Assembly (NCBI RefSeq): GCF_001447785.1
Contig: NW_015163751.1
Coordinates: forward strand, 1 to 64,000
Origin: Gekko japonicus
Lineage: Eukaryota
Direction: 5' to 3'
DNA: 64,000 nt
Under the pieces are notes generated by a model, which was not told where the DNA came from, searched no databases, and was given only the letters and a program-made list of their open reading frames with translations. How positions within the stretch are numbered: position 1 is the stretch's first letter; each line of letters starts with the position of its first letter. The position numbers were made by a program, and so were the translations under genes. Positions 2,716 to 48,400 of the stretch are shown here, piece after piece.

Positions 2716-5700
2716 GTGAGTGTTTCTAAAGTATCAGCAGATGCCCTATTCCTGAGGGCAGCTGGCATCTTCCAGAGTGGAAAGTCAAGCAGGAAAAAAG
2801 AGGTGCTGCAGGGCTTTACCTGGGTCCTTCAATCATCCGCTGCCCGAATGAACGTGATGAGGAAGGTCCCTGGCTCCACAGTAGAGGGCCTGATGTCCCC
2901 TAAGGATTCATCCCTGCCAGGGCTATTTTGGGGCAGGAACGCACAGGAACGGAGTTCCGTCTGGCTTCAGAGTTGGCCACGCCCACTACAGCCAAAACCT
3001 TTGTGTGCGTGGCTACAGAGGGAAGGCCTGGAGAGCGAACCCCCCAGCAACTCCGAGGCAGGTGGGCCAGGGGGCCCCCTGGAAGGATCGGGGAGGCAAT
3101 TAAATGCCTCTCGTGCCTTCCCTGGCCTGTCGAAGGGCCGGCTTGCCTGGGTTCCCTGCAGCCGTGGGGCGCCCAGGCAAGCCAAGGGAAGGCATGGGGT
3201 GTGGCCTAATATGCTAATGAGCTATGATGTCAGGGTGTGGCCTAATATGCTAATGCATTCCNNNNNNNNNNNNNNNNNNNNNNNNNNNNNNNNNNNNNNN
3301 NNNNNNNNNNNNNNNNNNNNNNNNNNNNNNNNNNNNNNNNNNNNNNNNNNNNNNNNNNNNNNNNNNNNNNNNNNNNNNNNNNNNNNNNNNNNNNNNNNNN
3401 NNNNNNNNNNNNNNNNNNNNNNNNNNNNNNNNNNNNNNNNNNNNNNNNNNNNNNNNNNNNNNNNNNNNNNNNNNNNNNNNNNNNNNNNNNNNNNNNNNNN
3501 NNNNNNNNNNNNNNNNNNNNNNNNNNNNNNNNGGCTGTGGCCTATTATGCTAAGAAGTTCCTGCTGGGCTTTTTCTACAAAAAAATCCCTGATCCCCGCC
3601 ATCCCCAGTTGCAAGGGTTTCTGCTAGTCATACCGGGGAGGGGCTTTGCCAGTGGACAATTCTAAGCTATATGGATTAATGTAAAGATCTGTGGCAGCAT
3701 ACAGCAGCTTTGGACTTTTTTTCTTTTGAGGTTAGGCACATCTTTTCTCCTTCTACCTTGTGTACAGTATGCACTGCCCTACTTACGGCAAACGAAAGGA
3801 AACATCGTCAACATTGGCGGCATTGCCGGTATTATTGGGATGAAAAATGCTCTGCCAACTACCACAAGCAAGGTAATCCTGACCAAGGACAGAATTGTTT
3901 GCCAATTTTTTTTAATGCTTCTGCTCTTGAGCTTCTTAGAGCAGCTTGGCTGGCAGATGAAGGTTTGCACAGCATGGGGATGACCAGTGATAGTGTCTCC
4001 ATTCTCTGTGCTTTGAAAAACTCAACTCTACCTGCGGGTTCTTGTAAATCAAGGTGCTCCCAAAGGCACAGGAGGAGGCTGGCTTGATATTTTTCGGTTC
4101 AGATATCAATCCTCATACATGATCCTTACGCCAGTTCAAAACCAGTAAAGGTTTCATGGGACGTTGATTTGCTTTCTTTTCATTATCAGACTGGGAAAAG
4201 TTCACTTAGGCCTCAGCGCTGAAAACATCCTACATCTTTGACCCTTCCCTTAGAACCCCAAGTACGGTTCCCGACTACCTAGAGTAAATGGGATGCCCTC
4301 CCCCTTGACTCGAGGCTTCATGGGAAGGTTATTTACATGGTGATGTCATTTCCCCCATGCTATGAAAAGCTTGATGGCAACCGTAACTCCAAGGGACGAG
4401 ATTTCTACCTCTCTGCTCTAATTTATCAATCTGCCAAAGAAATCTGTCCTTCAGGTCCCCAGTATTCAGGCTTCAGTTTCCTGGTCTAGGGATCAGACTT
4501 GGATATCTAGGGACAAATCGCCCCATGATGGAAGTCAGGGGGTCGTGGCAGTAATTTGGGGGGCCAGGGCCCAAGATGCCCCACTGTAGCTACAGGCCTG
4601 GATAAGGTCCAGCCCCCCCCTCCACCCCGTCCTCACCAGGGTTGCCAACAGGACTTAAGAAAAATACCCTCTCCCTTTAAGAGAAGCTTAGTAGCCACTT
4701 GGACTGTAGGCATTATTGAAGCCCATACCGTAAAAAATCATTCTCTTTATTCACATCAGAGTTTAGTCAGAGGCATAAGAGGAGGCGAGGATATTTCTGG
4801 ACAGTTTGCAACCCTGCTTGTTGGGTATTCTCTTGCAGGGCGCTGTGATTGCAATGACCAAGGCCCTGGCCATCGACGAGAGCAAATACGGAGTACGGGT
4901 CAACAGGTAAAAACGATTATCATCATTACAGAGCCCTCGATGCACAGTGTCCCTTGCAGAACACTCTCAGGAAAGAAAGATAGGACCTCCGTAGCCTAAC
5001 ACCAGGAGTTAACAGGCCAAGTTTTTTGCTAAAGCAAATAAAGAGATAATACAGGGGGAAAGATAAGGAATGATAACAGGTAATTGGAACTAAAAGAGTG
5101 TAACACTCAGACAAATGGGCTGGGGTAACTTTCCTGGAGAAGGTATAAGTGATTCAAAGTCCACAAATTTCTTTTCCCTTTCAAATATCATTGCTTATGA
5201 GAAGAGAACAACAATAAATAGATTAGGTACAAAGCATGGTATCTTCTAAAATTAGAGGTTAGGAAATTAATCCCATTATTTTCAATTCCACTTGAATAAT
5301 CTGCTTTGCTATAAGGACGTACATCCTCAGTATATCTGAAACGACCAAAGTACCCAAATCACTGCACTTACAGATAGAGGAGAGGAGGGGGACGTCTACA
5401 TACTAGCGGGTCTCCCCCAGGTATGCAGGAAAGTACAACATTGACAATTAACTAAAAAAAGCACAAGATACTGAGGAAAAAACCCAGCTTAAAAGAGAAC
5501 CGAATCTTCTCCAGGGAGCTCGAAATGTGGAGAGCAGGTGAGAATCCGTTAAAGGAGGGGAAAAAAGGTGGGGTGGGGGAGAAATCGGCCTCCTTAAGTC
5601 CACCCCAAAGAGTTTACAGAATCCTGGAGGTTTAGCTATTACTTTTTTCCTGTGTCTTAAACAAATGATCTGTTTATTCCCTGTGGACTGAGATTGCAGA

Positions 5701-6668
5701 GGCTGCATTCCACGCCATGTTTTTTCTGGGGCGTAGAAATGAATAACGAGGAGTCTGGGGTGAAAGACTGTAAGGTCATCATGGAAGTTGCTGTCTTTCT
5801 AGGAATAATTAGAAAGGCATGTCTTCAACACTCATTTGGGGACATATTCCTTGATGTTTCATGATGCCCCATATCTTTTTCTTAATTCTCAATCATTTCG
5901 AATTTTAGCATCTCGCCAAGTCATATCTGGACTCCTTTGTGGGAAAGGGAAGCAAATCGTTTTAAGAATCCAGAGGCCATAGTCCAGGAAGGCGAAAGTT
6001 ATCAGGCAAGTGTGTTGTGGGGAAACAGGAATGGAGCTGGTGCAGATGAATGGTTTCTTCCAGGGGTTGCCATCCTCAAGGTGGGGCCTGAAGTTCTCCT
6101 AGAATGACCGCTGTTCTCCAGGCGACAGAGATCAGTGCTCAGGAGGAAATGGCAGCTCTGCAGGGAAGGGGAACAGAAGTCCTAGAGTGTCCCCAGATGG
6201 AGGGTGCTGTTGGTCTTCACTATCTCCTTTGGAAGAAGCATCCCCCCTCCCCAGATTCTGCCCTCCGCAGGCACGGTTTCCCAAGCCAGGATTGGCAGTC
6301 TTAGTTCTACCACATGTAAAGTGGTAATAATAAGTACGGGAGTGTATGCAATGGCAGAAATTCGAATTTTGCACCCAGGAAACCTGAATTCTACTGCTTA
6401 TAAATCCTGCCCCACCCAGATTCAGCTTCTGAGACCTCATGATCTTATCTTATGTGAGCTGAGTTCAGAATTCTACATTTATCTCTCTTCTCTTGCACAT
6501 GTATAGCTTATGGGACGGTTTGGGACCCCAGAAGAGGTGGCCTTGGGCGTTCTGTTCCTTGCTGCTGATGGAACTTTCTGCACTGGTCTGAACCTTCTAC
6601 TCACTGGTGGAGCTGAAGTTGGCTTCGGAAGAAAGAGCCAGATGGGTCCTGACCAATGTTCCCTCTAA
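2627..6668 (+). CDS. HSD17B14: HSD17B14-like SDR, copy A (partial: exons 5-9; join 2627-2715,3768-3872,4839-4906,5909-6005,6507-6668)
   Basis: Spliced translation ..YIESSDDVTVHDFENLMQLNVVSCLLLSK/YALPYLRQTKGNIVNIGGIAGIIGMKNALPTTTSK/GAVIAMTKALAIDESKYGVRVNS/ISPSHIWTPLWEREANRFKNPEAIVQEGESYQ/LMGRFGTPEEVALGVLFLAADGTFCTGLNLLLTGGAEVGFGRKSQMGPDQCSL* matches HSD17B14 motifs (ALPYLR, TKALAIDES, ISPxxIWTPLW, FCTG..GGAE). Exon sizes 89/105/68/97 are the same in all copies. Confidence 0.9.
2918..3591. mobile_element. hAT-type non-autonomous DNA transposon (spans the N-gap)
   Basis: cagggct...ccctg TIRs; 8-bp TSD atccctgc/atccccgc; empty site present in copy B intron 5 (about 23230). Confidence 0.7.
3768..3872 (+). 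CDS. HSD17B14: HSD17B14-like copy A exon 6 (active-site exon)
   Basis: tacAG|tat ... agc aag|GTaatc; 105 bp; YALPYLRQTKGNIVNIGG...TTTSK. Confidence 0.9.
4839..4906 (+). CDS. HSD17B14: HSD17B14-like copy A exon 7
   Basis: ttgcAG|ggc gct ... aac ag|GTaaaa; 68 bp; GAVIAMTKALAIDESKYGVRVN. Confidence 0.9.
5909..6005 (+). CDS. HSD17B14: HSD17B14-like copy A exon 8
   Basis: tttAG|c atc tcg cca ... tat cag|GCaagt; 97 bp; GC donor. Confidence 0.88.
6507..6668 (+). CDS. HSD17B14: HSD17B14-like copy A exon 9 (stop codon supplied by an inserted MITE)
   Basis: tatAG|ctt atg gga cgg ...; TAA at 6666-6668 lies inside the MITE TIR; ancestral in-frame stop at 6913-6915; AATAAA at 7074-7079. Confidence 0.88.
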   Translation, partial: LMGRFGTPEEVALGVLFLAADGTFCTGLNLLLTGGAEVGFGRKSQMGPDQCSL

Positions 6669-6859
6669 GCTGTGGAGTCTTGTGAGCAAAAATTCTATTG
6701 TGTGAGCTACTGGCATTAAAGTTGTGAGCGAGCAATTTGGTTACTGCATAGATTAGTCTGCTCTGGAGCCATCCTTCCTGAGCTAAAACAAAAATGTGTG
6801 AGCAGGAGGCTAAAGAACTGTGAGCTAGCTCACACTAACTCAGCTTAGAGGGAACACTG
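6654..6859. mobile_element. 206-bp hAT MITE inserted in exon 9 of copy A
   Basis: TIR caatgttccctctaagctg / cagcttagagggaacactg; perfect 8-bp TSD gtcctgac at 6646-6653 and 6860-6867. Confidence 0.92.
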
Positions 6860-7984: not shown

Positions 7985-8150
7985 AGGTACCCACTTTATC
8001 TACTTGCATTTATGATGCTTTCAAACCGCTGGGTGGACGGGAGCTGGGACGTGGGCCGGGAGCTCACCCCGACTGCGGTGGGTTTCGAACAGCCATAATG
8101 GCTGTTCATTGATGTTACTTTGTAGGCGTTCTTACTGCCTGTGCCACCGC
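7985..8150 (-). mobile_element. Sauria SINE fragment
   Basis: reverse complement of the gagctccc...cagctcc...aagtagataaa..ggtac core, also seen at 27315-27606. Confidence 0.55.
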
Positions 8151-12457: not shown

Positions 12458-12810
12458 CAGGGGTTGTTTCATAGAAAAAGAGCTAGGGGAACTCATTAGC
12501 ATAACACATTAGCATATGCCACACCCCCTGACATCAGGGGCCCGGCGGTGGACCTGCAAGGCCGGCGGGAGTGCGAGGAAGCCCCGCCAAGGCCCTCCTT
12601 GGCCCCAGGCAGGCAGGGGTGGGGAGAGGCGGGGAAGAAGCAACTTACCCTCCCTCTTCTCCTGCCTCCTCCTGGCTGAATGAGGGCCGGAAGCGGGGCG
12701 GCCAGAAGCAGGGGGCAGGGCTTCATTGTGTGCCCTGCCCCCCCGCACCTCACCCGGGGGAACTGCGATCCCCCGCGTTCCCCCCCGAAATGACCTCTGG
12801 ATCAAAGTAT
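12458..12810. mobile_element. hAT-like element related to 2918-3591 and 17158-17533
   Basis: cagggg..tagaaaaagagc..gaactcattagcata..gccacacccc; right boundary uncertain. Confidence 0.45.
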
Positions 12811-13958: not shown

Positions 13959-14046
13959 ATGGCAACTTGTCTGCGTTATCCGGGCAAGGTGGTGATTGTG
14001 ACTGGTGGTACCCGAGGGATTGGTCTGGCCATCGTGAGAGAATTTG
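13959..14046 (+). CDS. HSD17B14: copy B exon 1
   Basis: ATG at 13959; MATCLRYPGKVVIVTGGTRGIGLAIVREF g|GTgaga; 88 bp. Confidence 0.92.
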
Positions 14047-17000
14047 GTGAGAATGGAGAGAAGTGGGTATGGAGGAGGGGGCATTTCCTGTCAACAGGGG
14101 CTGGGGTTGATCCTTTCAGGAAGACTCAGGACGTCTTGCTTCCTACATCTCTTATCTGGGGCGGAGAGAAATTGGGAATGAGGAAAATGTCTTCTTTATA
14201 TCTGCAGAGGCATTTTTGTCTGTCCTGCCAACATATAAAAGACTCATGGAGTAGTACCTTCTGGCATAAGGTCTTGTGGACTAGAGACTTTTCATTTGCC
14301 TTTGACATCCCATGACTCTTTCTTATGTTATCGTAAATAATAGGTTTGTGTGCTCCAGAACAGATTCCTTCTGTGGAAAACAGGTTACATGAACTATCCC
14401 TATTAGCTCTGGGGTGGGGTGAGCAATTCCTATTTTCATAGCAGGTAATGCTACACCTGCTGAATTTCCAAACTCTTGAAGCAGGACACCAGAATACAAG
14501 GTAGCAAATCTGACTGATACTAGGACTGTGAAGCTGGGTTGGGAAGTATTGGCTGTCCCTTATTTCCAGAGTAAGACTGGATCTTAGGGCTCCAGTACAG
14601 CAAGATTTGAGCACAAAAGTACCTAAAAGAGAAGCAAGATTTTCGGGGTATATCTGACTTTACAGACTCAGATATCTGATGATTCAAGGAGTTTTGACTC
14701 TCAAAAGCTTCTCCCCTGGAGACCTTGTTGGCCTTTCAGGTGCTCCTGGATTCTAATCTGGCTCTTCTCCTTCAGACCACAATGGCTGCCCACCTGAAAG
14801 GGTCTTCATGGAGGGTTTGGGGGGAGGGGGCTTCTGCTCCCCTTATCAGAGAGAGTTTGCTCTGGACAAGGAGATCTGCCTGCAGAAGGCTGCCCGTCCT
14901 GAAACATAAAACAACTCTTATCCCCTCTGAAGTTTTCTGAGGTTGTTTGAGGATGTAAATGGGGGGATGGGGGAAGCAGGGATTGAATCTGTTAAACAAA
15001 TAAATTAATCCAGTGCTGTGCATCTGTGAGTGAGCCAAGCCCCTCTGAGTTTTGTCTTGCGTTCCTTTCTCTCTTCGCCCTCCAGTTCGCCAAGGAGCCA
15101 AAGTGGTCTTCTGTTCACGAGCCTCTGAAGGTGAGACTAAAGCACTTTTTCTACTCCCCCCCATGACAAGCTCCCCTTGTTTGTTTAAATATGGCTGCGG
15201 TCACACAGGCAGGAAAATGCAGGGGGGAAGCGTGGCTGTTTGCCCCGGGGCAAAATAACGCACGGTTGCGCGAGCAGACATCCCATGGAGGTTCTGTGGA
15301 GGTCCCGTGGTAGGGGGGAGGTGCCGATCACACCACAATCCTGCGACACGGCAAAGAAGCGGCGTGCTGTGGCAAACGGGTGGGGGTTTTTTTTGTACAC
15401 AGACGTGTGCGCATGCCCCGTTGGGTGCTTGTGTGCATCCCGAGGACACTTGGGAAAAAAAACCTTTTTGCGAGGGGACATGGGCGGGTGCCGGATGCCA
15501 TGGGATTCCACCGGAAATGCGATCACATGCCCGCCCTTGCCTCACGGTTTCCAGAAACTAGTACCTCCAAGGTACTAGTTTTTTACCGCGCATCTTCGGA
15601 GTGAAGCCTTGGGTTCGCCACGGGAGCTCTATGCTTCCCAGATGTGGCGGTGAGATCGTGCCCAGAAAATCCGCCTATCTTCCATCTCTCTAGCGTGCCT
15701 AATGCTCCGTGTGACTGCAGCCTATGTATTTCCCACCTCAACAGAGATCCTTCTTGAAGCAGTGTACAAAGTAAAACTTAATGAAATCATAAAGCAGAAT
15801 AAATTGTCAATGAAATATTTATTTACTAATGATCAAACACATGAGTAGGAGCAAACCAGAACAACAAGCCATTTAAAGCATGAGTAAGCCACCACTAATA
15901 CTTGCCTACTCTGAGGCAGATTTCCCCCCCAAAATTATTAGTTCCCTTCTGTGACTAAGCAGCTCCAAGTAGTGTGTAAATAATTGTGGTTTTGAAAGAC
16001 TGTCTGTCCCACCCTGTCACACTGATTTCATTTTGACTTTTAATCCAGCCCAGGAATTTGATGCAGAAAAGCAGGAACACTCTTGCTTTATCCTTTGAGA
16101 CGGTATAACATTCAAACAGAAAGAACAATTTTATTTAACAGACAGGGATGGAATAAGTGTAGTCATGGATTGGAAATGCTGAGGTAAAAGTTGTTGATAG
16201 TACAGAATCCACTTCTTTAAAATAGCAAAATAGTGTTGTTCAGTGTTCCCTCTAAGCCGTGGAGTCTTGTGAGCAAAAATTCTCTTTTGTGAGCGACTGG
16301 TATTAAAGTTGTGAGCGAGCGATTTGGCTGTTGCATAGATTAGTTTGCTCTGGAGCTATCCTTCCTGAGTTAGGACAAAAATATGTGAGCTGGAGGCTTA
16401 AAAACTGTGAGCTGGCTCACACTAACTCAGCTTGGAGGGAACACTGGTGTTGTTGAAGCTTATTTTCATTTATTCTTGGATCTTAACTATGAGAGGCATT
16501 TTACTTAGTATTTTAGTTACGGCAACAATGTTTCTCAGACAGATGGTTTTTAGTGTATTGATAAAGGACCAAGTGTGAATGATGGGTTGAAAGGCCCTCT
16601 TGGTGGCTTATCCTGGGTGGATTGGAGGTTAAGCTGTCTTTAACAATGGCTGGGTTCAATTAGAGATACTTAAGAGTTGCCCAGTGATCTATATCGGGAA
16701 ATGGCTCATATTGACTTGATGAATTATCCCTTGGGGCTCGGGGAATATAAATGCTTTGTACATTTCAGTGACACCCTTCCTATGTGATAGAATTTACCTT
16801 GGTCACGACAGGACCAGGAGTGTTTTTGAGATTTGTTTTCAGGCACCCCACTGCGCTAAGGCTTACAAGGAGGTGCCCTTCAAAACAGGCAAGCACAGAT
16901 GAGGAATGAGATTGAGGGGTCTCCATGGGAGGTAATAAAACATGTAAGATCTGCTATGTGCCTGAAGCAAGAAGGAGAATATCCTACCGGGGGCATTAAA

Positions 17001-20000
17001 GGGCTTAGCAGCTAGCATGGTCAAATTAAGAACTTTCTAGTATTTTCAAATGATCCCCTCCTATCTCCTGATAGGCTCACTGGAGACTTCCTCTTCTTTT
17101 AAACCCATTTCCTCCTTAGTTGCTTATTATACAGTTAATTGATTAGATAGTTAGAACCAGGGCTTTTTTTGTAGAAAAAGCCCAGCAGGAACTCATTAGC
17201 ATACTAGGCCACACCCAACAGCAGAAACTCATTAGCATATTAAGCCACACCCCTGACACCACAGCTCATTAGCATATTAGGCCACACCCCATGTTACCAC
17301 ACTCACCTTTTGCTTGTTATTCTGTTTACTTTGTTTGTTGTCAAAACCCTGGGCTTCTTTTTGTAGCAGGAACGTCTTTGCATGTTAGGCCACACCCCCC
17401 TAATGTAGCCAATCCTAATGAGTTTCTGCTGTTAGGTGTGGCCTATTATGCTAATGAATTCCTGCTGGGCGTGGCCAACTCAGGAGCCAGCCGGAACTCC
17501 GTTCCTGTGCGTTCCTGCCCCAAAATAGCCCTGGAGAACCTTCTCTCTTCTCTCTGCACAGTTGTTTCTCTTCTAAATTAAACTGTTTATTCTTTCAGCA
17601 GCTTGAGCTCCGCTCCTTTTTGCATATTTTAAATTCTGCCAACAGGAGGAGGGGTCAGGGGCCTCACAGTCACCCACATCACTTCTGTAGGCACACAGAG
17701 CAGGGCTTCAGAAGCAGATCTTAACTGAGGGAATGGATGGCTCCAAGCCACTGACATCCTTGAAGCTAAGAAACAGCACTGTGGATGGATTGTCAGCAAC
17801 AGATGGGTAGCCAGTGCAGATCTTTCAGCACAGGGAAGGTATGATCCCTGTATCCAGCCCCTGACTCACTTCCAGTATCTCAGGTTAGCTAATATAAAGA
17901 AAATATGAGGTTTAGGATAGTGGTGTAAAAGTAAGTTAGAAGAATAAGAGCTGCTTCAGGCCCTGCAAGAGAGAGCACAGGTAAGAAATTCAGGTTATAT
18001 TCACCCTTGAATAGAATGTTGCAAATGGAGAGAGAGAAATATGCACATGACAGAGGTGATTTCCCACAAGCACTGCTCCGCACTCACTCCTCCCTTTTGC
18101 CCCGATGGTACGTGTCAATTTCACACAAGCTGCTGCGTGGCCACATTTTGCCCCACAGCTTCGTGTGATTTCCCCCGCGTCTACTCAATCCTCAAAAAAC
18201 AGGATTGAGTAGACGCAGGGAAAATCGCACAAAGCTGCGGGGCAAAATGCGGCCGCACAGCAGCTTGTGTGAAATTGACATATACCATCGGGCCAAAGAG
18301 AAGAGTGAGCGCAGAGCAGCACTTGTGGGAAATCACCCAGAAAGTGGGATCATCAGACCTTTTTGGGCTGTGGTTTATCTGTAGACTAGTCAGTCATCAA
18401 GTTCTTTGTCTTCCCCTGTTCCTGTAGGCGACACTAGATGGGGCCTGCATGCCCAAGGAGTTTGTTACCCCATTTAAAGCAAATGTATTTGTTTAGTTTG
18501 CAGAACTTTTTACCTGCCTTTCTCCCAAATGGAGACGACAACCAAGAGAGAGGAGCAACAGTCTCCAAGTCATTTAGCAAACATTCCTGCACGTATTTAA
18601 ATCTTGGGCACAGCTGAAAAGGAAGATGGAGGGATAAGGCAGAGGTTGTACAAGAAAGGCAGGGTTGGAAGGTTTGTTCTACTGGGAACTGTTCTGTTCT
18701 CCCCCCTTGCAGCGAAAAAGGGACAAGCGATTCAGCGGGAGGTGCAGACTTCTGGTTGCCCAGGGGACGCTTTCTATCAAGTCTGTGATGTTCGCAAGGA
18801 GTCAGACATTAAGGTAGGCTAAAACTGAGTGGAGAGTGGTACTTCTTTTGGAGGTTCTTTATTCTGTTGCTACCCTTGCCTTGCCTTAGACGTCTCTTCA
18901 TCTTTGTTCCTGCAGAGGCTGATTTTGGTAACTGTAGAGCATTACGGATGCCTGGACTGCCTTGTGAACAATGTTGGAACTGGTGAGTGACATACAAACC
19001 TTTGGGGCCTGCACCTGTTCCAGGTGTTGGGAACAAGACAGAGAAGGATGGGCAACAAAGACAGAGAAGGATGGGCAACAAAGGAGCCTGGGATGTATGT
19101 GTCTGGATGGGAGGTCATTTCCTGTTTCTTCAAAAGCCAGAACAGACTTGACCTACAGAGGGTTTGAGATAGCCTATATATTCCGGTTCAGGAACTGTTC
19201 CCTCATGGTTTCTGGTCTGACATTTCAGACAGAGCCGTTTTAGTAACGGTTGCCTACTGGAATATATTTTCACTTTCAGACAGAAATGCTTCTGTCCCGT
19301 TAGGGAAGCATTTCTGAACTGTTTTACCTGCAGACTGCTTCCAAGCGGTCTTCACTTTTCTATACCATTTCTGAAGTGCTACGGGGTGCTGTGTAAAATG
19401 CCCCAGTGTGTAAGTACCATGGAAGAGTGCATCTTTGGAGTACTAAGTATAAAGTATGAAGGAGTTAGAGGACATCTCTAATGATAACCAAATGCAAAGA
19501 GTTATTCTGACATTTAAAAGCCCAAGAATTCCCTCCAAGATACTCACTTATATCAATGAACTGAGGTATAAGGGCAACAAGAGATCCTTAATTGATAGTT
19601 AAACACAGAAAAGCCGAGGAAGAAAGGCTACACTAAGGGACACTGAAGTATATCAATGAACTGAGGTATAGGGCAACAAGAGATCCTTAATTGATAGTTA
19701 AACACAGAAAAGCCGAGGAAGAAAGGCTACACTAAGGGACACTGAAGAGTCCAAAGAGCATTTACAAGAAACCTCACTGCTATAGCAGGACTATCAACAA
19801 GAAAAGATTATAAAGAATTAGAGGGAGTCACTGGAATCAACAGCACCATTGAAAATAACCTTTATATTAGGAATCTTGATATTAAACAAGATATTTGTGA
19901 GAATGTCAGCCATAATGATTTTATCAACCAGAAGCATAATGCATTTTTCATGACACTGCCAAAATACTGGATGTTAATAGGTAAAGACTGACTAAAACGT

Positions 20001-32146: not shown

Positions 32147-32243
32147 CATCTCACCATGTTATATCTGGACTGATTTTACGAAAAGTTATATAAACCAGTC
32201 ACCGAATCCAGAGGCAGCAATGCAGGAAGCCAAGGATAGTCAG
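32147..32243 (+). CDS. HSD17B14: duplicated exon 8b (alternative cassette of copy B, or remnant of another copy)
   Basis: cctAG|c atc tca cca ... cag|GCaagt; 97 bp, intact; ISPCYIWTDFTKSYINQSPNPEAAMQEAKDSQ; no exons 1-7 were found between 9a and 8b. Confidence 0.7.
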
Positions 32244-32389
32244 GCAAGTGTGTTGTGGGGAAACAGGAGTGGTGCTGCTGCAGATGACGGGTTCTCCTCA
32301 AGGTGGCCATCCTTGGGGCGAGGCCCGAAGTTCTCCCAAAAGGACAACTCCTTCTTTTATGAAGTTGGAGAACTTCCAGCCAACCTTCC

Positions 32390-33800
32390 ATGCTTGGGCA
32401 AGGTGTTTGGGCGGGTTGTGGCTTCTCAGCTCCAGGGGCTCTTGGAAGATGCTGATTTTCTAGACTCAATTCAAACTGGCCTCAGGCCAGGATTTGGAAC
32501 AGAGACTGTTGGGTCCTCTTGGTTAATGAGCTCTACTGAGAAACAGACAGATGGAATGTGACCCTCCTAAGCAGCCTTCAATATTATCAACCATAGTATC
32601 CTACTGAGCTGCCTCTCAGCACTAAGTCTAAGGGAGCCTGTATTGTGGGAGTTCTAGTCCTATTTCTGAGGGGGGTGTGTGTCAGTCTCAGAAGATGGTA
32701 CTGGAGGATTCCTACTCTGTCCTGTGACCGTTGGACTGTGGGGTTCTGCAGGGTTTGATTGTACCCCCCATGCTGTTTAATATCTATGTGAAACTACTGG
32801 GAAAGGTAGTCATCAAGTCTGAGCTGCAGTGTCACCAATATGTGGATGGTACCCAGTTCTGCCTTTCTTTCTCACTTCATTCTGGAGATGCTGTTGATGT
32901 TCTGAACGGGTGCTTGGAACCCATAATAGGCTGGATGAGGGTGAAGAAGCTGGAACTTAATCCTGACAAGGCAAAAGTTCTGTGAGTTAGTAGAAAGGTC
33001 AACTAGAACCTTAGGATTCCTCCTCTCTTGGAGGGGGGTTATACTCTTAAAAGTCAGGTACACAGCTTGGGAGTGCTACTCAACATAGCAGTTACCTTGA
33101 AAACCAGACGGCTACGGTGGTTCAGAGTGCTTTCCCCCAGCTTCGGTTGGTGCATTAGCTGCATGTGTTCCTGGTTCAATCAGATCTTACCCACCGTGCT
33201 GCATGCCTTAGTTACATGTAGACTGGGCTATTGCATTGTGCTCTGCTTGGGGCTACCCTTGAAGAGGGCTCAGAAACTGCAGCTAGTGCAGAACAAAGCA
33301 GCTAGACTGCTGGTTGGAACCAGCAATCTGGAGTATGTCGCCCTAATACTACAGCAGTTACAATCTATCAGTCCACTCCCAAGCCCAACTCAAAGTGTTG
33401 TTTTCAGCCTTCGAAGCCCTCCTGGCCTGGGACTGGAGAATCTTCTTCCATATGTTCCTGCCTGGGAATTAAGGTCACAAGGAGAGGCTCTCCTTACTGT
33501 CCCACCAATCAAAGGAGTTCCTTTGGTGGGTACACAAGAGAGGGCCTTTTCAGTGGCAGCCCCACAGTTCTAGAACAACCTCCTCCCCAGGGAGGTGTGC
33601 CAGGCCCCCTCCCTTTAGATCTTTAGGATGTAGTTGAAGACAGCTTTATTTAGGATTGCATTTGATTATGTTGCTTGCAGTCCTAAATTGTGATTTTTTT
33701 TATTTTGTATTTTATGTATTCTATAATGTATTTTACCTTTATCATAAGCCATCAAGCACTGAAAGGAAGAATGGTGGCTAATAAATGTTTTAAATAAATG
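32390..33800 (+). mobile_element. L2-clade LINE, duplicated copy in intron 8b
   Basis: same motifs and insertion position as 28780-30180. Confidence 0.85.
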
Positions 33801-34217
33801 AATATTCTGTAGGCGACAGTGCCCAGGTGAAAACAGCAGCCCTGGAGGGTAGGATAAAGAGAAGTCCTAGAGTGGCTGCAGAGGGTGGATGCTGGTAGAC
33901 TTCAGCTTCTCCTGTATAAGAAGAAGCATCTCTGCTGGACTCCCTCCCCTGACCACACTTTGCCCTCTCTGGGCACTGCTTCTGTGTCTCCCATGCTGGA
34001 ATGGGCAACCCAACTTCTTCATCTTCTAAGAAGGTAACAAGAAGAAGGGCTGTGTCTACACAAATTGGAAGTTAGAATCCTGCCCCCAGGGAGTCTGAAT
34101 TCTACTGGTAGTAAACCCTGCCCCACTCAGCTTCAGCTTCTGAGACCTCAGGATCTTACCTTGCATGCGATGAGTATAGAATTCTACATTTATCTCTCTT
34201 GTTTTGCGCATTTACAG

Positions 34218-34415
34218 CTTATCCGACATTTTGGGACCCCGGAAGAAATAGCATTGGCTGCCCTGTTCCTTGCCGCAGATGGTACTTTCTGCACTGGTTT
34301 AGACCTTATGATTAGTGGTGGAGCTGAAGTCGGCTTTGGGAAGAAGAAGCAGGTGGATCCGGAGCCTGAGCCAAGTGGGGGTGGGAACTCACAGGGTTCC
34401 TCCAGCAAGCAATAG
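34218..34415 (+). CDS. HSD17B14: duplicated terminal exon 9b
   Basis: tacAG|ctt atc; LIRHFGTPEEIALAALFLAADGTFCTGLDLMISGGAEVGFGKKKQVDPEPEPSGGGNSQGSSSKQ*; AATAAA at 34435-34440. Confidence 0.7.
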   Translation, partial: LIRHFGTPEEIALAALFLAADGTFCTGLDLMISGGAEVGFGKKKQVDPEPEPSGGGNSQGSSSKQ

Positions 34416-36174: not shown

Positions 36175-37174
36175 GATACAGTTACATAAAGGAAACACAT
36201 ACACCAAGATGCAAGCAAATTCAATGACTACTTGCAAGAAAACGTGAAAGAGAACATGACAAAAGAGCAGAATGACAATTGGGTCGATGTCAGCATATGC
36301 TCTGGTGGGCCACCACTGGGCCCATGGTTTCTGGCAGGGCCCACTGCTGCTGACTGGCACCCCCTGTTCACTCACTGCCCAGTGCTGCAGCACTCACCGC
36401 CCAGTGCTGCAGCACCCATGGTCCCTCCTGCCCGTGTGCCACTGGGGAAAGATCTGAAGGTAGCTGTGAGCAGGGATGGTGTGACGGATTGTGAGCAGAT
36501 AGGGCAAGGATACACAGCAGGTGGGAGGCATACAGGTGGGTGGAAGGTCCTAAGTGCTTGGTAGTGGGCAGAGGAAGGGAGGGGGCCCTGGGAGCTGTTT
36601 GTCAAGGACCCCCAAACACCTGGAACTGGCCCTGAGTGACATCAGTGAGCCCTGCCAGGGCCAGGGAAATGGCAGCCAGGTACTGTGTGAATTTAGGAGG
36701 GGAAAGAACAGGGATTCGCCCCATACAGAAAAAAAATGTACAACATGACCAGAAGGATAAGAATAGGTGGGAGTGCATATTACAGAGGCTATTCCAGACC
36801 TGGGGAAGCACCTTTCTTTATGTAATTTATTCCAGTTTCTTGCATGCAGAACTAAAATGTAATGCTTCCCATTTCCGAGACTAAGCATTCCTTCNNNNNN
36901 NNNNNNNNNNNNNNNNNNNNNNNNNNNNNNNNNNNNNNNNNNNNNNNNNNNNNNNNNNNNNNNNNNNNNNNNNNNNNNNNNNNNNNNNNNNNNNNNNNNN
37001 NNNNNNNNNNNNNNNNNNNNNNNNNNNNNNNNNNNNNNNNNNNNNNNNNNNNNNNNNNNNNNNNNNNNNNNNNNNNNNNNNNNNNNNNNNNNNNNNNNNN
37101 NCCTCCTCCTCCTCCTCCTCCTCCTCCTCTCACTGTGGTTAATCTTACTTGTGATCCAGGCACTATTCTGCACT

Positions 37175-39216: not shown

Positions 39217-39414
39217 CTAAGGCTTGATGGAGAAACCCTTTGAGTTCCCACCCCCACTTTGCTCAGGCTCAGGATCCATCTGGTTCTTTATCCCAAAGCC
39301 GACTTCAGCTCCGCCACTGATCAAAAGGTTTAAACCGGTGCAGAAAGTACCATCTGAAGCAAGGTACAGGGCAGCCAATGCCACTTCTTCTGGGGCCCCC
39401 AAACGTCCCATAAG
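39217..39414 (-). CDS. HSD17B14: copy C exon 9 (terminal)
   Basis: LMGRLGAPEEVALAALYLASDGTFCTGLNLLISGGAEVGFGIKNQMDPEPEQSGGGNSKGFSIKP*. Confidence 0.9.
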   Translation of the reverse strand, partial: LMGRLGAPEEVALAALYLASDGTFCTGLNLLISGGAEVGFGIKNQMDPEPEQSGGGNSKGFSIKP

Positions 39415-42400: not shown

Positions 42401-45400
42401 TGAACTGAGCTTGGGAGTGGATCGATATACAGTGTTAATGCTGTAGTATTGGGGCGACATGCTCCAAATTGCTAGTCCTGACCAGCAGTCTAGCGTCTTT
42501 CTTCAGCACTAGCTGCAGCTTCTGTACACTCTTCAAGGGTAGTCAAAGCTAGGAAAAAGTACTCTGAACCACTGTAGCCTTGTAGTTTTCAAACAGGTCT
42601 GCTGTGTCAAATAAGCTGAGAACCTGGCTTTTCAAGGGGAGATTAACTTCCTCCATGACAGGAGAGATCCGAAGGCCATGGTCTATCTTTCTATTAATTC
42701 AGAGAACCTCTGTCTTCACTCAGAGTCTCAGAGCTTACAAACTCCTTTTCTCTTCCACTTCCCACAGCAGACACCCTGTAAGGTAGGTGGGGCTGAGAGA
42801 GCTCTTTCAAGAACTGCCCTTTCAAGGACAGCTCTTGTCAGAACTATGGCTTACCCAAGGTCATCCAGCAGCTGCAAGTGGAGGAGTGGGGAATCAAACC
42901 CGGTTTCCCCAGATTAGAGTCCGCACACGTAACCACTGTGCCAAACTGAAGGATAGAGCTGGGCATCATCCACATATTGTTGACACCACTGCTCAAACTT
43001 CCTGATGGCCTCTCCCAGCACTTTCACCTGGAGCTGAGAAGCAACAACCCACCCAAGCACCTTGCCCAAGCATTGAAGACTGAAGGCCAGAAGTTCTCCA
43101 ACATAGTGAAAGGAAGAGTTGTCCTTCTGGGAGAACTTCAGACCCTGACCCAAAAATGTGTGAATCAAAGGGAGAATCATGGAATAATGATATAACCAAT
43201 GCAAATGTCCCTGTGAGAAGATAGTGAATCAATAACTAAAGATATTTGTTGATCTATTTGAATAAATGTATATGTAAATATTAAATGCTTTATGTGTGAA
43301 CACAAACATATCTCTACTCCATTCCAGAACCAATAGTATTTAAATGCAAAATGTCTTTTTCTTGTGTTGAAATTCTTCCAAGCACCATTCAGAGTACTTG
43401 GAAGAGTTGATGGATATGCAGTTCAATGGTTGTTCAAATCCAAATGCTGCCACGTTTCCCTTGAGACCTTTCCAATATGATTCAAGTCTCTCAGAAATAT
43501 AATTCAGAGTCTCCAATTCAATCCAACGAGCAGCTAGCTGGATCAGTTTGTTTCCCTTGATGCTTTCTCAATGTCAGGAAACTGAAGAAAATTAACAAGA
43601 ACACTGAAATTCATGAATGTATTTTCTTGAGTTGTTTCTTGAGTTGTCATAAATTGTAGGATGGCGTATCTGTTACTTGCAGGAAGGAAGGAAGGAAGGA
43701 AGGAAGGAAGGAAGGAAGGAAGGAAGGAAGGAAGGTAGGTGAGGGGGGGGGACATAGACAGACAGTCAGTAAGCCAGACAGACAGGGAGGGAGGGAGGGA
43801 GGGGGGGAGGAGGGGAAGAGAAGTCAAAGCTGTTAGATCGCGCTAACAAAGGACTCGTAGAGTGATTCAGCAAGTGATTCAGCTTTATTTAGAAGTAACG
43901 AACAAGCACTAACTCAGTAAGAAACCAGAACAAGAAACAGTGGGAGCTTATGCTCCTTTTAAACATAACCGGGCTAATGTAGCCACGCCTATTTACATTT
44001 AACAACCAATGAGATTGCTTGGTTAAGGACCAATGGGAGTCTTTCCCTCCTAGGGAATGGTATCGTTCTGATTGGTCGCTGTTACGAAGCGACCAATAGG
44101 AAGTTCGCTCAGAGGAGCCCTGGTCTGGCTCGAAGCTTAACAGGGGAGTCCTATGAGGTGATTCATGTAATCATTTCAATACATTACAATTCCTCCCAGC
44201 CTTTGTGTTCTGAGGTGGGACTTAGGCGACATGGCCAATGGAAGCTGGGGAAGGTTCTGACGGACACTTCAAGCCTCCAAACACTGTTGGTGCGCATTTT
44301 CTCTCCGCTGCATCTGACGCTGCGTGTTACTCAATTATATATATATAAGGGAGATATAAGGGATATATATATATATATGTATGTATGTATGTATGCATGT
44401 ATGTATGTATGTATGTATGTATGTATGTATGTATGTATGTATATGTATAGGATACTAAAGAGTCTTCAGTCTGTGTGACTTTAAAACTCACACAAGTGAG
44501 TCTAATTAGTGGCATTAATAGTTGGTAGCTGCAGTGAGACCTTGCCAACTCTCTCAGAATGGAAGCCGTTTAAGCGAGATAGATTTTTGATTGGTCAAAA
44601 TACATACACTGTGCATGTTTGGTGCGTGTGTGTTATATTTTGGTTAGAGCTTAAAATGTTATGTTTTGGTTGGAGTTTAAAATGTTCTAGAATAGAGTTT
44701 GCTATAGGAATTGTTTACATGAATTGCAGGGTTCTTGTTAGTCTTCTTCAATTTCCCGATTTCCAGAAAACATTGAGGGAAATGAACTGATCCAGCTAGC
44801 TGCTCGTTAAATGGGATTGGAGATGCTGAATTATATTTCTGAGAGACTTGAATCATATTGGAAAGGTCTCAAGGGAAACGTTGCAGCATTTGGATTTAAA
44901 CAACCATTGAACTGCATATCCATCAACTCTGAAGGTTCATACCTACCAAACGGTGCTTGGAAGAATTTCTACAAAAGAAAGAGACATTTGGCATGTAATA
45001 CTATTGCTTCTGAAATGGAGTAGAGCTATTCTTGTATTAACACATATATGGTTTAATGTTGACATATAAATTTATTCAAATAGATTTGCAAATATCTAGT
45101 TATTGATTGCGATGGTTATACCCACCCCAAAAATGGTAACCTTAAGGAGAACCAGTCATCTGCCACAGCACAATTCCGGTTTCCCCACAACACACTTGCC
45201 TTACTATCGATGGCTTTGTGCATTGCCGCCTCTGGATTCGGTTTCTGATTTACATCCCTTTCCATCAATGGAGTCAAAATATGACCCGGTGAGATGCTAG
45301 GATTCAAAATATTTGGAAATTTAAAAAGGGGCAGGGGTACCATGAAGCATCAAGAAATATGCCCCCTAGTGAATTAGTTTTTGAGGAAGTGTCTTTCTTA

Positions 45401-48400
45401 TCATTAGAGAGAGACCAGCTTCCAATTACATGACAATCTTTGCATTAAGCACACTATATAAACTGATTCATCCCACAATCCTTGGCATGACTATTCATTT
45501 ATACATCCCAGGAAAATACAGCATGAACTGCAGGGACCAAGATTTCAGTCCACACTGAATCATTTGTTCATGGCACAAGAAAAAGCAGCAGCAAACATCC
45601 ATTTTTAAAAGCATTTTTAAAGGACCTGTGGGTTAGTTGCACAAGCTGATGGCCTGCAAGGAATCACTGAAAGTAATACCTCCTTCACCAAATCTCCTCC
45701 TCCAGGATTCTGTAAGCTCTTTGGGGGAGGACTTAAGCAGCCTCCCGCCCCATTTTTCCTCTTAATTAAGCTGCTCTTTACATTCTGGGCTTCCTGGAGC
45801 ACATCCGGTTATTTTTCAAGCTGGTTTTCCCCCTTAGTCTCTTGTTTTCTTCTAGTTAGTTGAAAAAGCTGTACTTTCCTGCACACCTGGGGGAGACCCG
45901 CTAGTATGGAGACACCCCACATTCTCGACCTGAAGGTGCCCTGGTTTTGGTGCTCTGGTGGTAACTAGGTTGGCCAATGTCAAACACGGCACCTGGAGAT
46001 CTCCCACTGTCACACTTCATCTCCAGATGACCAGGATCAGTTCCCCTGGAGAAAATGGCTGCTTTAGTGGGTAGACCCTTCTGAGGTCCCTCCCCTCCCC
46101 AGGCTCCACCCCCAAAATCTTCAAATATTTTCCAACCCAGAGCTGGTCACCCTAGTGATATCACATATGCTAATGTACACTATTATATCTAGTGCTACTT
46201 CCAATGCACGGCCTTAAGGAAAACCAGATTATTCCAGTAGATTTGAAAATAATGGGATTCATTTCCTAGGTTTTAATTTTAGAAGATATTTTGGGCCTAG
46301 TCTATTTTTTTGTGTTTCTGTGCTCATAAGTAACAACATTAACATTGGAAAGGGAAAAGAAATATGGGGACTTTTTAACATTTATACCTTGTCCAGACAA
46401 AGTAACCCAGCCCACTTGTCTGGATATTTGACTCTTACAATGGCAGTTACTTCTTATTATTATGTTCTCCCTTTTCATTTCTTTTAGCAAAAACTTTGCC
46501 TGCAATATCCTGACATTGGGCTACGGAGGACCAGTCTTTCTTTCCTGTAAGTATTCTGCAAGGGACACTACATATCAAAAGTTCTGTATGGATAATAACC
46601 ACTTTTACCTGTTGATTCGTACATCATATTTGCTCTCATCGATGGCCAGGGCTTTGGTCATTGCAATCACAGCGCCCTGTAAGAGAAAAGAACAACAAGC
46701 AGGGTGTCCAACTGACCAGAAATGGCTTGGCCTCCTTCTCTTACAGTCTGATGTGCTTTAAGGGAAGGATTTTTTTTAATGATGCAGACATAAATAGTGC
46801 CTACAATCCATTTTGCTATTCAGCTTCTATTAAAGGATAAGCAATTATTCTCAAGGCCTGTTGGCAACTCTCAGTGAAGATACAGTACAGAGAAGACCAA
46901 TGTACAATGCATTACATTAGTCTAGTCTCAACTTTGGCAATCCTAGAGAAGTTAGGACAGGGGTTGGTGGGCCAAACCTTCTCATCTCTGAATGTTGGTT
47001 TTCAGCTCCTGAGTTGCCACCATCCACCAAAAAGATCTGTTCCCTCTGCCCAAGAGAAACAGGGGTAGGGGCTGAGATTCCTCTAGGGGGGCAGTTTGGA
47101 CCTAGATATCCTAGTCTGATTACTTACCCAGGAAAATGGGTATATTGGACCTTGGAAACAACATTCCCCTGAAGCCTCTATTAAAGGGACAGGGTGTTTC
47201 ATTGTCTCTAGGTGGATGTCAAATTTACTTGGGGTTCTCATGTAAGGGTGATAGATGCAAGATGTTTTTGCATTTGAGGCTCAAGTGAGATTTTCAGTCT
47301 GATAATGAGAAGAAAATGGACATTTCATAAAACCTTTACTGGTTACAGGCTGGTTTTAGACTTATCTATGAAAATTGACAAGTGATCTGAAAAAAAAACT
47401 AACCTGGCCTCCTTCTGTGCAAACCTTCATCTGCCCATCAAACTGCTATTAAAGGCAGAAGAAGAAGAGGAGGAGGAGGAGGAGATTGGATTTGTACCCC
47501 GCCCTTCACTTGGAGTCTCAGAGCAGTTTACAAACTCCTTCCCTTCCCCCCCCCATAACAGACACCCTGTGAGGTAGGTGGGGCTGAGAGAGCTCTTTCC
47601 AGAACTATCTTTGAGAGAACAGCTCTAACAGAACTATGGCTTGCCCAAGGTCATCCAGCAGCTGCATGCACACTTAACCACTACACCAAACTGGCTCAAG
47701 AGCAGAAGCATTAAAACAAAAAGGGATTCTGTCTTTGGGTCAGGATTACCTGGCTTGAGACATATGCCACATCATCCTTCTTCCCAAAGACACCAACGAT
47801 ACTGGCTATGTTGATGATGTTTCCTTTTGTTTCCCGTAAGTAGGGCAGTGCATACTGTACCCAAAAGACAAACAGAAAAAGTCTGCTGTATCTCAAAAGA
47901 GAAAACTTATGAAGCTGCTGTAACTTAGAATTGTCCACTGGCAGAGTCCCTACTTAGCACAGCTAGCAGAAATCCTTGCAACTAGAGATGGCAGAGATGA
48001 ACACTTTGGATGGAAAGATGGTCCTCAGCTGTGGAGCTTAGTTCCTGTCCCTGTAGTTCTGATTCGGACCTTAATATAGTACTATACCTCTGGCAATGAA
48101 GTTTATACAATGATTAGAGCGATTTATACTAAACAACAAGCTAAGGTCCTTATTAATGGAGATTTATCATGAAATATTGAGATACAAAAAGGAACTAGAC
48201 AAGGATGTCCCCTCGCACCTCTATTGTTTATTTTTGTTCTTGAGGTCTTAAATGACATCATTAAAGTGGATGTCCAAATTAAAGGCCTAAAAATAAGAGG
48301 AGAAGAATATAAACTTCAAGCCTTTGCTGATGATCTAGTATTTCTGTTAGAGAATCCATTGAGTTCTATTAAACAACTGATAGCTTCTTTGCAAAAGTAT

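What the first reader, a model, noticed from the sequence alone, without database searches (positions are those of the whole stretch)
3768..47854. Three intact HSD17B14 paralogues, each with a differently broken catalytic triad: a candidate pseudoenzyme family
Seen: every copy keeps an open frame, conserved exon sizes and good splice sites, and B and C keep the TGxxxGxG and NN[AV]G motifs. The active-site exon 6 reads A NIGG...TTTSK (Ser>Gly at 3819-3821, Tyr>Thr at 3858-3860), B NMAS...SASSK (Tyr>Ser at 23660-23662) and C NIAS...YVSSQ (Lys>Gln at 47750-47752). Established: classical SDRs need Ser plus YxxxK (human HSD17B14 NISS...YVATK; S141/Y154/K158), and the human enzyme is a tetrameric NAD+-dependent steroid/L-fucose dehydrogenase. 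Inference: three separate catalytic lesions with no frameshift or nonsense decay, despite diverged TE-filled introns, suggest selection for a non-canonical role. Candidates are a dinucleotide or ligand binder/sensor, a regulatory subunit in heterotetramers, an abundant structural or gland protein (enzyme-crystallin style), or altered chemistry.
Basis: partly seen in the sequence, partly recalled or inferred. Interest (0 to 1): 0.92.

Follow-up and report, generated by a model that had tools for sequence, protein, structure and literature searches.

The report
Gecko HSD17B14-like genes lacking catalytic residues
Three neighbouring gecko copies of a sugar/steroid dehydrogenase gene have each lost a different key catalytic residue yet are clearly kept intact by selection, and they belong to a large, apparently undescribed gecko-wide expansion in which this loss has happened again and again.

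Summary
The window matches Gekko japonicus: my exon model of copy B is 285/285 identical to a RefSeq "HSD17B14-like" protein. B and C are complete nine-exon, 285-codon genes. A is seen only from exon 5 to exon 9. The catalytic exon reads G/T/K in A, S/S/K in B and S/Y/Q in C, where human HSD17B14 has S141/Y154/K158. The assembly gap at 36895-37101 lies between the convergent 3' ends of B and C and touches no exon. A second gap (3262-3532) sits in A's intron 5.

The copies are not decaying pseudogenes. B and C exons show no indels (about 14 expected from intron rates, P~7e-7), no stops (P~0.02) and all splice sites kept. Constraint is mosaic: the cofactor-binding and core exons have dN/dS 0.05-0.4, the active-site loop and lid exons about 1 or more.

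The three are part of a Gekkota-specific clade (45 sequences, 7 species), sister to a canonical gecko HSD17B14. Across the whole 71-sequence tree, which includes a separate Anolis expansion, Tyr was lost at least 8 times. A belongs to an all-Tyr-less clade shared by three gekkonid genera. B's lesion is shared with G. kuhli. C's is recent.

Function is inferred: non-canonical or pseudoenzyme SDRs.

The parts
2627..2715 (+). Copy A exon 5 (helix alpha-E region). Separated from exon 6 by the assembly gap at 3262-3532.
   Evidence: tblastn with P0001 halves and splice sites. Closest relative is G. kuhli P0040.
3768..3872 (+). Copy A exon 6, the catalytic exon: NIGG...TTTSK (Ser141>Gly, Tyr154>Thr, Lys kept).
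4839..4906 (+). Copy A exon 7 (helix alpha-F / beta-6), highly conserved.
5909..6005 (+). Copy A exon 8 (SPSH in place of the PG motif, plus the lid). GC donor at 6006.
6507..6668 (+). Copy A exon 9. Homology to B and C ends at about 6652, where a ~210-bp repeat is inserted. The new tail is CSL followed by a stop at 6666-6668.
13959..14046 (+). Copy B exon 1 (ATG, VTGGTRGIG).
   Evidence: Model identical to RefSeq P0062.
15086..15130 (+). Copy B exon 2 (end of beta-2, VVFCSRASE).
18713..18813 (+). Copy B exon 3.
18916..18982 (+). Copy B exon 4 (NNVG).
22652..22740 (+). Copy B exon 5.
23570..23674 (+). Copy B exon 6: NMAS...SASSK (Tyr154>Ser).
26739..26806 (+). Copy B exon 7.
28533..28629 (+). 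Copy B exon 8 (SSNY in place of SPGN). GC donor.
30603..30800 (+). Copy B exon 9, with TAG stop.
32147..34415 (+). Spare duplicated cassette of B: exon 8' (32147-32243) and exon 9' (34218-34415). Both are open with intact splice signals. The RefSeq model does not use them.
36895..37101 (.). Assembly gap, intergenic, at the centre of the inverted duplication between B' and C. Not filled and not read.
39217..39414 (-). Copy C exon 9, with TAG stop.
45200..45296 (-). Copy C exon 8 (SPGH, PG motif kept). GC donor.
46609..46676 (-). Copy C exon 7.
47750..47854 (-). Copy C exon 6: NIAS...YVSSQ (Lys158>Gln).
50234..50322 (-). Copy C exon 5.
51749..51815 (-). Copy C exon 4 (NNAG).
53282..53382 (-). 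Copy C exon 3.
55619..55663 (-). Copy C exon 2.
56683..56770 (-). Copy C exon 1 (ATG, VTGGTSGIG). The RefSeq model P0101 uses an upstream exon at 60273-60133 instead.

Best explanation
A, B and C are members of a Gekkota-specific, tandemly and invertedly duplicated subfamily that arose from HSD17B14 (L-fucose / 17-beta-hydroxysteroid dehydrogenase, a classical tetrameric SDR).

Shown: the genes are kept as full-length Rossmann-fold proteins by purifying selection on the reading frame, the splice sites, the dinucleotide-binding N-terminal half and the alpha-F/beta-6/C-terminal core. The active-site loop (exon 6) and substrate lid (exon 8) change at or above the neutral rate. The Ser-Tyr-Lys chemistry has been given up repeatedly in the family.

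Inferred: these copies no longer carry out the canonical Tyr-based hydride/proton transfer. They act as catalytically impaired SDRs (pseudoenzymes). In the Gekko copies they probably still hold NAD(P)(H). Their fast-diverging pocket would serve either to bind small ligands or to form non-catalytic subunits beside catalytically competent paralogues of the same array. Which of these two roles applies is not resolved.
For: - Identity: B is 52% identical to human HSD17B14 over about 262 residues, E 6.6e-75. Pfam adh_short and adh_short_C2 score far above their cut-offs for B and C.
- Lesions at S141, Y154 and K158 are confirmed. Y154F abolishes activity in rabbit HSD17B14 (PMC11293516).
- Retention: no indels in 855 nt between B and C against 14.2 expected from intron rates (P 7e-7). 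None in 495 nt between A and B against 11.1 expected (P 1.5e-5). P(no stop) is 0.017 and P(all 32 splice dinucleotide bases kept) is 0.003.
- Mosaic constraint: B-C dN/dS is 0.30 in exons 1-4 and 0.94 in exons 5-9. A-B is 0.44 and A-C 0.52. Exons 7 and 9 give 0.05-0.2 in the comparisons with A, and exons 6 and 8 are 1 or more in several pairs. The N:S heterogeneity has P 0.002 to 2e-5.
- The same pattern holds across 65 gecko copies: exons 1, 3, 4 and 7 are as conserved as in canonical orthologues, while exons 5, 6 and 8 are much more variable.
- Phylogeny (IQ-TREE with UFBoot/SH-aLRT): the gecko-expanded clade has 45 rows at 100/100 and is sister to canonical gecko HSD17B14 (98/94). A sits in an 11-row clade (100/99) from Gekko, Heteronotia and Paroedura in which every member lacks Tyr. 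B and its G. kuhli sister both read SASSK (100/92). Tyr was lost at least 8 times, Ser at least 4 and Lys at least 4, always inside expanded clades. All 18 rows outside the gecko-expanded and Anolis clades keep N-S-Y-K.
- Precedent for dead SDR subunits in heterotetramers: petunia benzaldehyde synthase beta and BbsCD (PMC13418739).
Against: - No expression evidence could be obtained.
- dN/dS in exons 5-9 is about 0.8 on the B branch and about 1.3 on the C branch, from small counts. This is also what recent relaxation would give.
- C's Lys>Gln is younger than its split from the Lys-bearing sister P0063.
- A is incomplete in the window, has a repeat inserted in its last exon, and matches no protein model in the databases searched.
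- No ligand, cofactor or partner binding was tested.
- The exon classes used for the heterogeneity test were chosen after the per-exon values were seen.
- Gene conversion between copies could help keep frames open.
Confidence: 0.5

Rival explanations
1. The copies are still working oxidoreductases with altered chemistry or substrates. The fast-evolving lid and active-site loop reflect substrate diversification in a detoxification or pheromone/steroid-type enzyme array. The missing residue is tolerated or is supplied from elsewhere. One example is C, which keeps Ser and Tyr. Another is the Tyr in the SSNY / SPGY segment of many copies.
For: - B and C keep the Gly-rich motif, NN(A/V)G and the structural Asn.
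- C lacks only Lys.
- About half of the sampled family members keep the full tetrad, so the array as a whole is probably enzymatic.
- dN/dS of 1 or more confined to the substrate-facing exons is what substrate diversification would give.
Against: - Y154F kills rabbit HSD17B14 (PMC11293516).
- A lacks both Ser and Tyr.
- The Paroedura relatives of A also have bulky residues in the Gly motif, NLAE/NTAE for NNAG, and Arg at the Ser position. This is hard to reconcile with any dinucleotide-dependent catalysis.
- The Tyr after the PG motif also occurs in copies that keep Tyr154, so it is not a specific compensation.
Confidence: 0.2
2. These are redundant copies in a birth-and-death array that lost function recently and are on their way to becoming pseudogenes. 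The open frames are left over from an earlier functional period.
For: - Overall B-C dN/dS is 0.70, with a bootstrap interval that reaches 1.07.
- Branch estimates in exons 5-9 are 0.8 for B and 1.3 for C.
- C's lesion is recent.
- A has a repeat in its last exon and matches no protein model in the databases searched.
- There is no transcript evidence.
Against: - There is not one indel, stop or splice-site loss in any of 23 exons, despite intron divergence of 16-23% with about 0.02 indels per nt.
- Exons 1-4, 7 and 9 remain strongly constrained.
- B's lesion predates the G. japonicus / G. kuhli split, and the Tyr loss in the A lineage predates the split of three gekkonid genera. Intact copies in this lineage have multiplied since.
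Confidence: 0.22
3. The lesions or the gene models are assembly or exon-model artefacts.
For: - Two assembly gaps lie in the region.
- A's exon 5 to exon 6 join spans one of them.
- C's RefSeq model uses a different first exon.
Against: - The B model is 285/285 identical to RefSeq P0062, and C's shared exons are 100% identical to P0101, which the database places on an 80.6-kb scaffold.
- The same lesion types occur in orthologues from other species.
- Neither gap touches an exon.
Confidence: 0.03

Closest known systems
HSD17B14 (DHRS10, SDR47C1), the NAD+-dependent L-fucose / 17-beta-hydroxysteroid dehydrogenase
   Same: - Best solved-structure match: B is 52% identical to the human enzyme over the whole domain.
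- Same classical SDR motifs in the N-terminal half.
- Phylogenetically derived from it, as sister to the canonical gecko copy.
   Different: - These are lineage-specific paralogues, not the orthologue.
- The Ser-Tyr-Lys triad is broken in each copy.
- The PG motif is lost in A and B.
- They carry a C-terminal extension of roughly 10 residues.
- They read CS[RK]AS where canonical squamate proteins read CAPxSE after beta-2.
Inactive SDR subunits in heterotetramers: petunia benzaldehyde synthase beta and BbsC/D of Thauera (PMC13418739)
   Same: - SDR-fold proteins that lost a catalytic residue (Lys>Leu in the petunia beta subunit) but are retained.
- They coexist with catalytically competent relatives.
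   Different: - No evidence here that A, B or C pair with an active paralogue.
- The petunia and Thauera cases are single dedicated pairs, not a radiation of many copies.
Enzyme-derived non-enzymatic proteins, such as taxon-specific enzyme crystallins of geckos and the Drosophila ADH-derived fat-body protein (recalled from memory, not checked here)
   Same: - A dehydrogenase or reductase fold reused after duplication.
- The catalytic requirement is relaxed while the fold is kept.
   Different: - No tissue or abundance data here.
- Crystallin recruitment usually involves one gene, not an array of 10 to 20 copies.
Unprocessed (duplicated) pseudogenes in tandem arrays
   Same: - Tandem or inverted duplicates with repeat-rich introns and missing catalytic residues.
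- dN/dS is elevated in part of the gene.
   Different: - No frameshift, stop or splice-site loss in any exon.
- Several exons are strongly constrained.
- The lesions are shared across species.

Membership tests
Classical SDR superfamily (Pfam adh_short / adh_short_C2) | Domain match above Pfam's gathering score | tested here: met
   P0062 (= B) scores 177.5 and 165 bits, and P0101 (approximately C) 158.8 and 135.9 bits, against cut-offs of 27 and 26.6. A's single exons give only weak matches in the right order (exon 6 to profile positions 119-153, exon 7 to 149-169, exon 9 to 200-235). Each is too short to pass alone.
Classical SDR superfamily | Gly-rich dinucleotide motif TGxxxGxG | tested here: met
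   B has VTGGTRGIG and C has VTGGTSGIG. A cannot be judged because its exon 1 is outside the window.
Classical SDR superfamily | NNAG motif | tested here: met
   C has NNAG. B has NNVG, a variant also found in many family members with an intact tetrad. A is not visible.
Classical SDR superfamily (catalytically competent members) | Asn-Ser-Tyr-Lys catalytic tetrad (S141, Y154, K158 in human HSD17B14) | tested here: not met
   A reads N-G-T-K, B reads N-S-S-K and C reads N-S-Y-Q.
Classical SDR superfamily | PG motif after beta-6 | tested here: inconclusive
   C keeps it (SPGH). A has SPSH and B has SSNY.
HSD17B14 orthologue group (L-fucose dehydrogenase) | Orthology: groups with single-copy HSD17B14 of other squamates | tested here: not met
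   A, B and C fall in a gecko-only clade (100/100). That clade is sister to the canonical gecko copies P0110, P0107 and P0109.
HSD17B14 orthologue group (L-fucose dehydrogenase) | [quoted passage not shown] | not testable with these tools
   Needs recombinant protein. Y154F is inactive in the rabbit enzyme (PMC11293516).
Pseudoenzyme | Homologue of an enzyme that lacks residues essential for catalysis | tested here: met
Pseudoenzyme | Retained under selection rather than decaying | tested here: met
   Deficit of indels, stops and splice-site changes, constrained exons, and lesions shared across species.
Pseudoenzyme | Expressed as a protein and shown to lack activity | not testable with these tools
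Unprocessed pseudogene | Frameshift, premature stop or lost splice site | tested here: not met
   None in the 9 exons of B, the 9 of C or the 5 of A. The one disruption is the repeat in A's last exon, which only replaces the variable tail.
SDR heterotetramer with inactive subunits | Specific assembly with a catalytically active paralogue | not testable with these tools
   Needs co-expression, pull-down or native mass spectrometry.

The most novel reading that the evidence does not exclude
Geckos, and independently anoles, have evolved a radiation of HSD17B14-derived proteins that repeatedly discard the SDR catalytic triad but are kept as folded, mostly dinucleotide-binding proteins with a hypervariable pocket. 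This would be a vertebrate pseudoenzyme family with a new non-catalytic job: ligand carrier or sensor, or modulatory subunit of the active paralogues. It might be tied to a lineage-specific tissue. The co-occurrence in the two best-known pad-bearing lizard groups is noted only as an untested coincidence.
Probability: 0.3. Interest if true: 0.8.

Novelty: new variant of a known kind. Interest (0 to 1): 0.6.

Why it matters
- HSD17B14 has only recently been assigned a physiological role, as L-fucose dehydrogenase. It is single-copy in the other vertebrates sampled here.
- A lineage-specific array of roughly 10-20 copies per gecko genome, in which the catalytic Tyr was lost at least eight times across the tree while frames, splice sites and the cofactor-binding half stayed under selection, is a natural experiment. 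It shows how an SDR fold is repurposed once catalysis is abandoned.
- It offers many independent "dead" and "live" sister pairs for biochemical comparison, for example C against P0063.
- Five of the seven literature searches looked for this expansion and none found a paper describing it. The genes exist only as automatic "HSD17B14-like" models.

Tried and rejected
No orthologous DNA could be fetched, so no branch or site codon models across species were possible.
There is no RNA evidence and no raw-read check of the lesion codons.
- Complex prediction on canonical G. japonicus HSD17B14 (P0110) with B (P0062, residues 22-306) gave no verdict, because one unrelated control scored as high as the pair. 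It counts neither for nor against binding.
- Literature searches for a gecko or lizard HSD17B14 expansion were blank.
- tblastx between the copies was too noisy, because the introns are still alignable. Exons were mapped instead with a leopard-gecko protein found by searching exon 6 alone.
- Joined spliced models of A and C were not sent to any search or fold tool. A was searched exon by exon by reference. B was represented by the identical database protein P0062 and C by P0101. Exons were concatenated only inside local scripts, for codon counting and for the family alignment and tree.
- The N runs were neither filled nor read across.
- Cofactor-preference inference from the residues after beta-2 was dropped, because canonical squamate proteins already differ from the human Asp42 context.
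- Structure prediction was not run, because 52% identity to a solved structure already fixes the fold.

Full report
**What is in the sequence**

- A at 3768-3872 (+) reads NIGG...TTTSK.
- B at 23570-23674 (+) reads NMAS...SASSK.
- C at 47854-47750 (-) reads NIAS...YVSSQ.

Searched alone against solved structures, C's exon 6 hits human HSD17B14 first. That alignment places the residues at S141, Y154 and K158.

**Gene models**

I searched exon 6 of C alone against the representative protein library. This returned a 560-residue leopard-gecko model made of two fused tandem copies. I used its halves for tblastn on the window and then checked splice signals by eye.

B (+ strand, 13959-30800) and C (- strand, 56770-39217) each have nine exons of identical sizes: 88/45/101/67/89/105/68/97/198 nt. 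Each has an open 285-codon frame. Introns are GT-AG except intron 8, which uses a GC donor (CAG|GCAAGT) in every copy.

Only exons 5-9 of A are in the window (2627-6668). They are open and have the same sizes as in B and C.

My B model is 285/285 identical to the RefSeq protein [quoted passage not shown] (P0062). C's shared exons are 100% identical to P0101. The window therefore matches G. japonicus, and both genes are already annotated automatically.

P0062 carries a short upstream 5' exon at 11983. P0101 replaces the canonical exon 1 with an upstream exon at 60273-60133.

**The assembly gaps**

There are two N runs. The flagged one, 36895-37101, lies between the spare exon 9' of B (ends 34415) and exon 9 of C (39217-39414, opposite strand). 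It is intergenic. It sits at the centre of an inverted duplication whose arms run roughly 27.6-35.7 kb and 46.2-38.2 kb. No frame or intron crosses it, although what it hides is unknown.

The second gap (3262-3532) is in intron 5 of A. The link between A's exon 5 and exon 6 therefore rests on scaffolding, on phase, and on both exons being closest to the same G. kuhli protein, P0040. I did not read across or fill either gap.

**Are the genes decaying?**

The introns of the copies are still alignable. Over 4.5 kb of B-C intron, p = 0.164 with 75 gap events, which is 0.0166 per nt. A-B and A-C give p of about 0.23 with about 0.02 gap events per nt. The exons are almost as diverged at the nucleotide level (84% identity for B-C), but they differ sharply in the kind of change:
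- B and C exons have no indel in 855 nt, where 14.2 are expected (Poisson P 7e-7).
- A and B exons have none in 495 nt, where 11.1 are expected (P 1.5e-5).
- A substitution-only simulation at the intron divergence leaves a 285-codon frame open in only 1.7% of trials.
- All 32 splice dinucleotide bases are kept, with P 0.003.

Long-standing pseudogenes are excluded.

**Selection on amino acids is mosaic**

| Comparison | dN/dS | Note |
|---|---|---|
| B-C, whole gene | 0.70 | bootstrap 0.47-1.07 |
| B-C, exons 1-4 | 0.30 | bootstrap 0.11-0.65 |
| B-C, exons 5-9 | 0.94 | |
| A-B, exons 5-9 | 0.44 | below 1 |
| A-C, exons 5-9 | 0.52 | below 1 |

Exon by exon:
- Exons 1, 3, 4, 7 and the core of exon 9 are constrained, at 0.05-0.4.
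- Exon 6 (active-site loop) and exon 8 (PG motif and lid) are at 0.7-2.1.

The N:S heterogeneity between these exon classes is significant (P 0.002 to 2e-5). The caveat is that I grouped the exons after seeing the values.

With A as outgroup, both the B branch (0.79) and the C branch (1.32) are fast in exons 5-9, on small counts.

**The wider family**

A search with the G. kuhli A-like protein returned dozens of "HSD17B14-like" or "L-fucose dehydrogenase-like" models from seven gecko species: Gekko japonicus, G. kuhli, Heteronotia binoei, Paroedura picta, Sphaerodactylus townsendi, Euleptes europaea and Eublepharis macularius. It also returned one canonical copy in each of three of these species (G. 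japonicus, P. picta, S. townsendi).

In a 71-row IQ-TREE analysis (support given as UFBoot/SH-aLRT):
- The expanded gecko copies form one clade of 45 rows (100/100), sister to the canonical gecko HSD17B14 (98/94).
- A lies in an 11-row clade (100/99) drawn from Gekko, Heteronotia and Paroedura. Every member has Thr, Ala or Ser in place of Tyr154.
- B pairs with G. kuhli P0009 (100/92), and both read SASSK.
- C pairs with G. japonicus P0063 (100/96), which keeps Lys, so C's Lys>Gln is recent. An independent Lys>Gln is shared by another Gekko orthologue pair.
- On the whole tree, Tyr was lost at least 8 times, Ser at least 4 and Lys at least 4.
- By my count from the labels, 24 of the 45 expanded gecko rows are non-canonical.
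- All 18 rows outside the gecko-expanded and Anolis clades keep N-S-Y-K.
- Anolis has its own expansion, which includes a Phe/Leu-for-Tyr clade.

Column entropy across 65 gecko copies shows the same mosaic as the codon analysis. Exons 1, 3, 4 and 7 are as conserved as in canonical orthologues that span lungfish to squamates. Exons 5, 6 and 8 are far more variable.

In Paroedura, the Tyr-less copies also have bulky residues in the Gly motif, NLAE/NTAE in place of NNAG, and Arg at the Ser position. At least there, cofactor binding is probably gone as well.

**Interpretation**

Established knowledge:
- HSD17B14 is an NAD+-dependent L-fucose dehydrogenase with triad S141/Y154/K158, and the Y154F mutant is inactive (PMC11293516).
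- SDR heterotetramers with inactive, structurally required subunits exist, namely petunia benzaldehyde synthase and BbsCD (PMC13418739).

Inference: A, B and C are retained, catalytically impaired members of a gecko radiation. Either they use the conserved Rossmann half and core together with a fast-diverging pocket for binding, or they serve as non-catalytic subunits. I put this at about 0.5.

The rivals are:
- Altered but real catalysis, about 0.2. C is the best candidate, since it keeps Ser and Tyr.
- Recent loss of function in a birth-and-death array, about 0.22. C and the repeat-truncated A are the weakest copies.
- Artefact, about 0.03.

**What could not be done**

- The one complex prediction gave no verdict and is not used as evidence.
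- Joined models of A and C were not sent to any search or fold tool. A was searched exon by exon. B and C were represented by the database proteins P0062 and P0101. Concatenation was done only in local scripts.

**Novelty and verdict**

It is a new variant of a known kind, namely pseudo-SDRs and dead-enzyme paralogues. The function is not established. Interest 0.6.

Noticed in passing
window 6006, 28630, 32244, 45199: Intron 8 of every copy (A, B, B', C) uses a conserved GC donor (CAG|GCAAGT) instead of GT. The RefSeq model of B uses exactly this junction.
   Followed up: partly
window 27836-34453: A 3-kb tandem duplication at 86% identity gives B a second exon 8'/9' cassette (32147-32243 and 34218-34415). 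It has intact acceptors, the GC donor and an open frame. Its branch shows a lower pN/pS (0.40) than B's own exons 8-9 (0.92), on small counts. The RefSeq model uses the first cassette.
   Followed up: partly
window 6652-6880: A ~210-bp repeat interrupts A's last exon about 45 nt before the ancestral stop. Other copies of the repeat lie at 16241-16448, 23307-23486 and 39950-40154. Homology to the ancestral tail resumes at 6884. The lost tail is the variable, low-complexity extension of the gecko clade.
   Followed up: partly
window 60133-60273 (-) and 11983-12022 (+): These are alternative 5' exons used by the RefSeq models. C's model starts at 60273 and splices in phase to exon 2, skipping the canonical exon 1 that carries the Gly-rich motif. 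B's model adds 21 residues from an exon at 11983. Both have good GT donors. Their real usage is unknown.
   Followed up: partly
window 60272-60312 (+): The CCATGG at 60271-60276 gives an ATG on both strands. The + strand reads 13 open codons followed by GTGAGA. This may be the first exon of a divergently transcribed gene sharing a promoter region with C's upstream exon.
   Followed up: no
window 41009-41470 (+): An ORF with a Ty3/gypsy-type integrase core lies in the GC-rich part (59% GC) of C's 5.7-kb intron 8. It is a retroelement fragment.
   Followed up: no
window 3262-3532: A second assembly gap, not mentioned in the finding, lies in intron 5 of copy A between exon 5 and the catalytic exon 6.
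   Followed up: yes
family alignment; window 15086-15130 and 55619-55663: Nearly all expanded gecko copies read CS[RK]AS after beta-2, where canonical squamate HSD17B14 reads CAPxSE. This is a shared change at the adenine-ribose end of the cofactor site and might alter cofactor preference.
   Followed up: partly
related proteins P0119, P0123, P0126 (Anolis): Anoles have an independent HSD17B14 expansion of 10 sampled rows. It contains a clade with Phe or Leu in place of the catalytic Tyr, which parallels the gecko pattern.
   Followed up: partly
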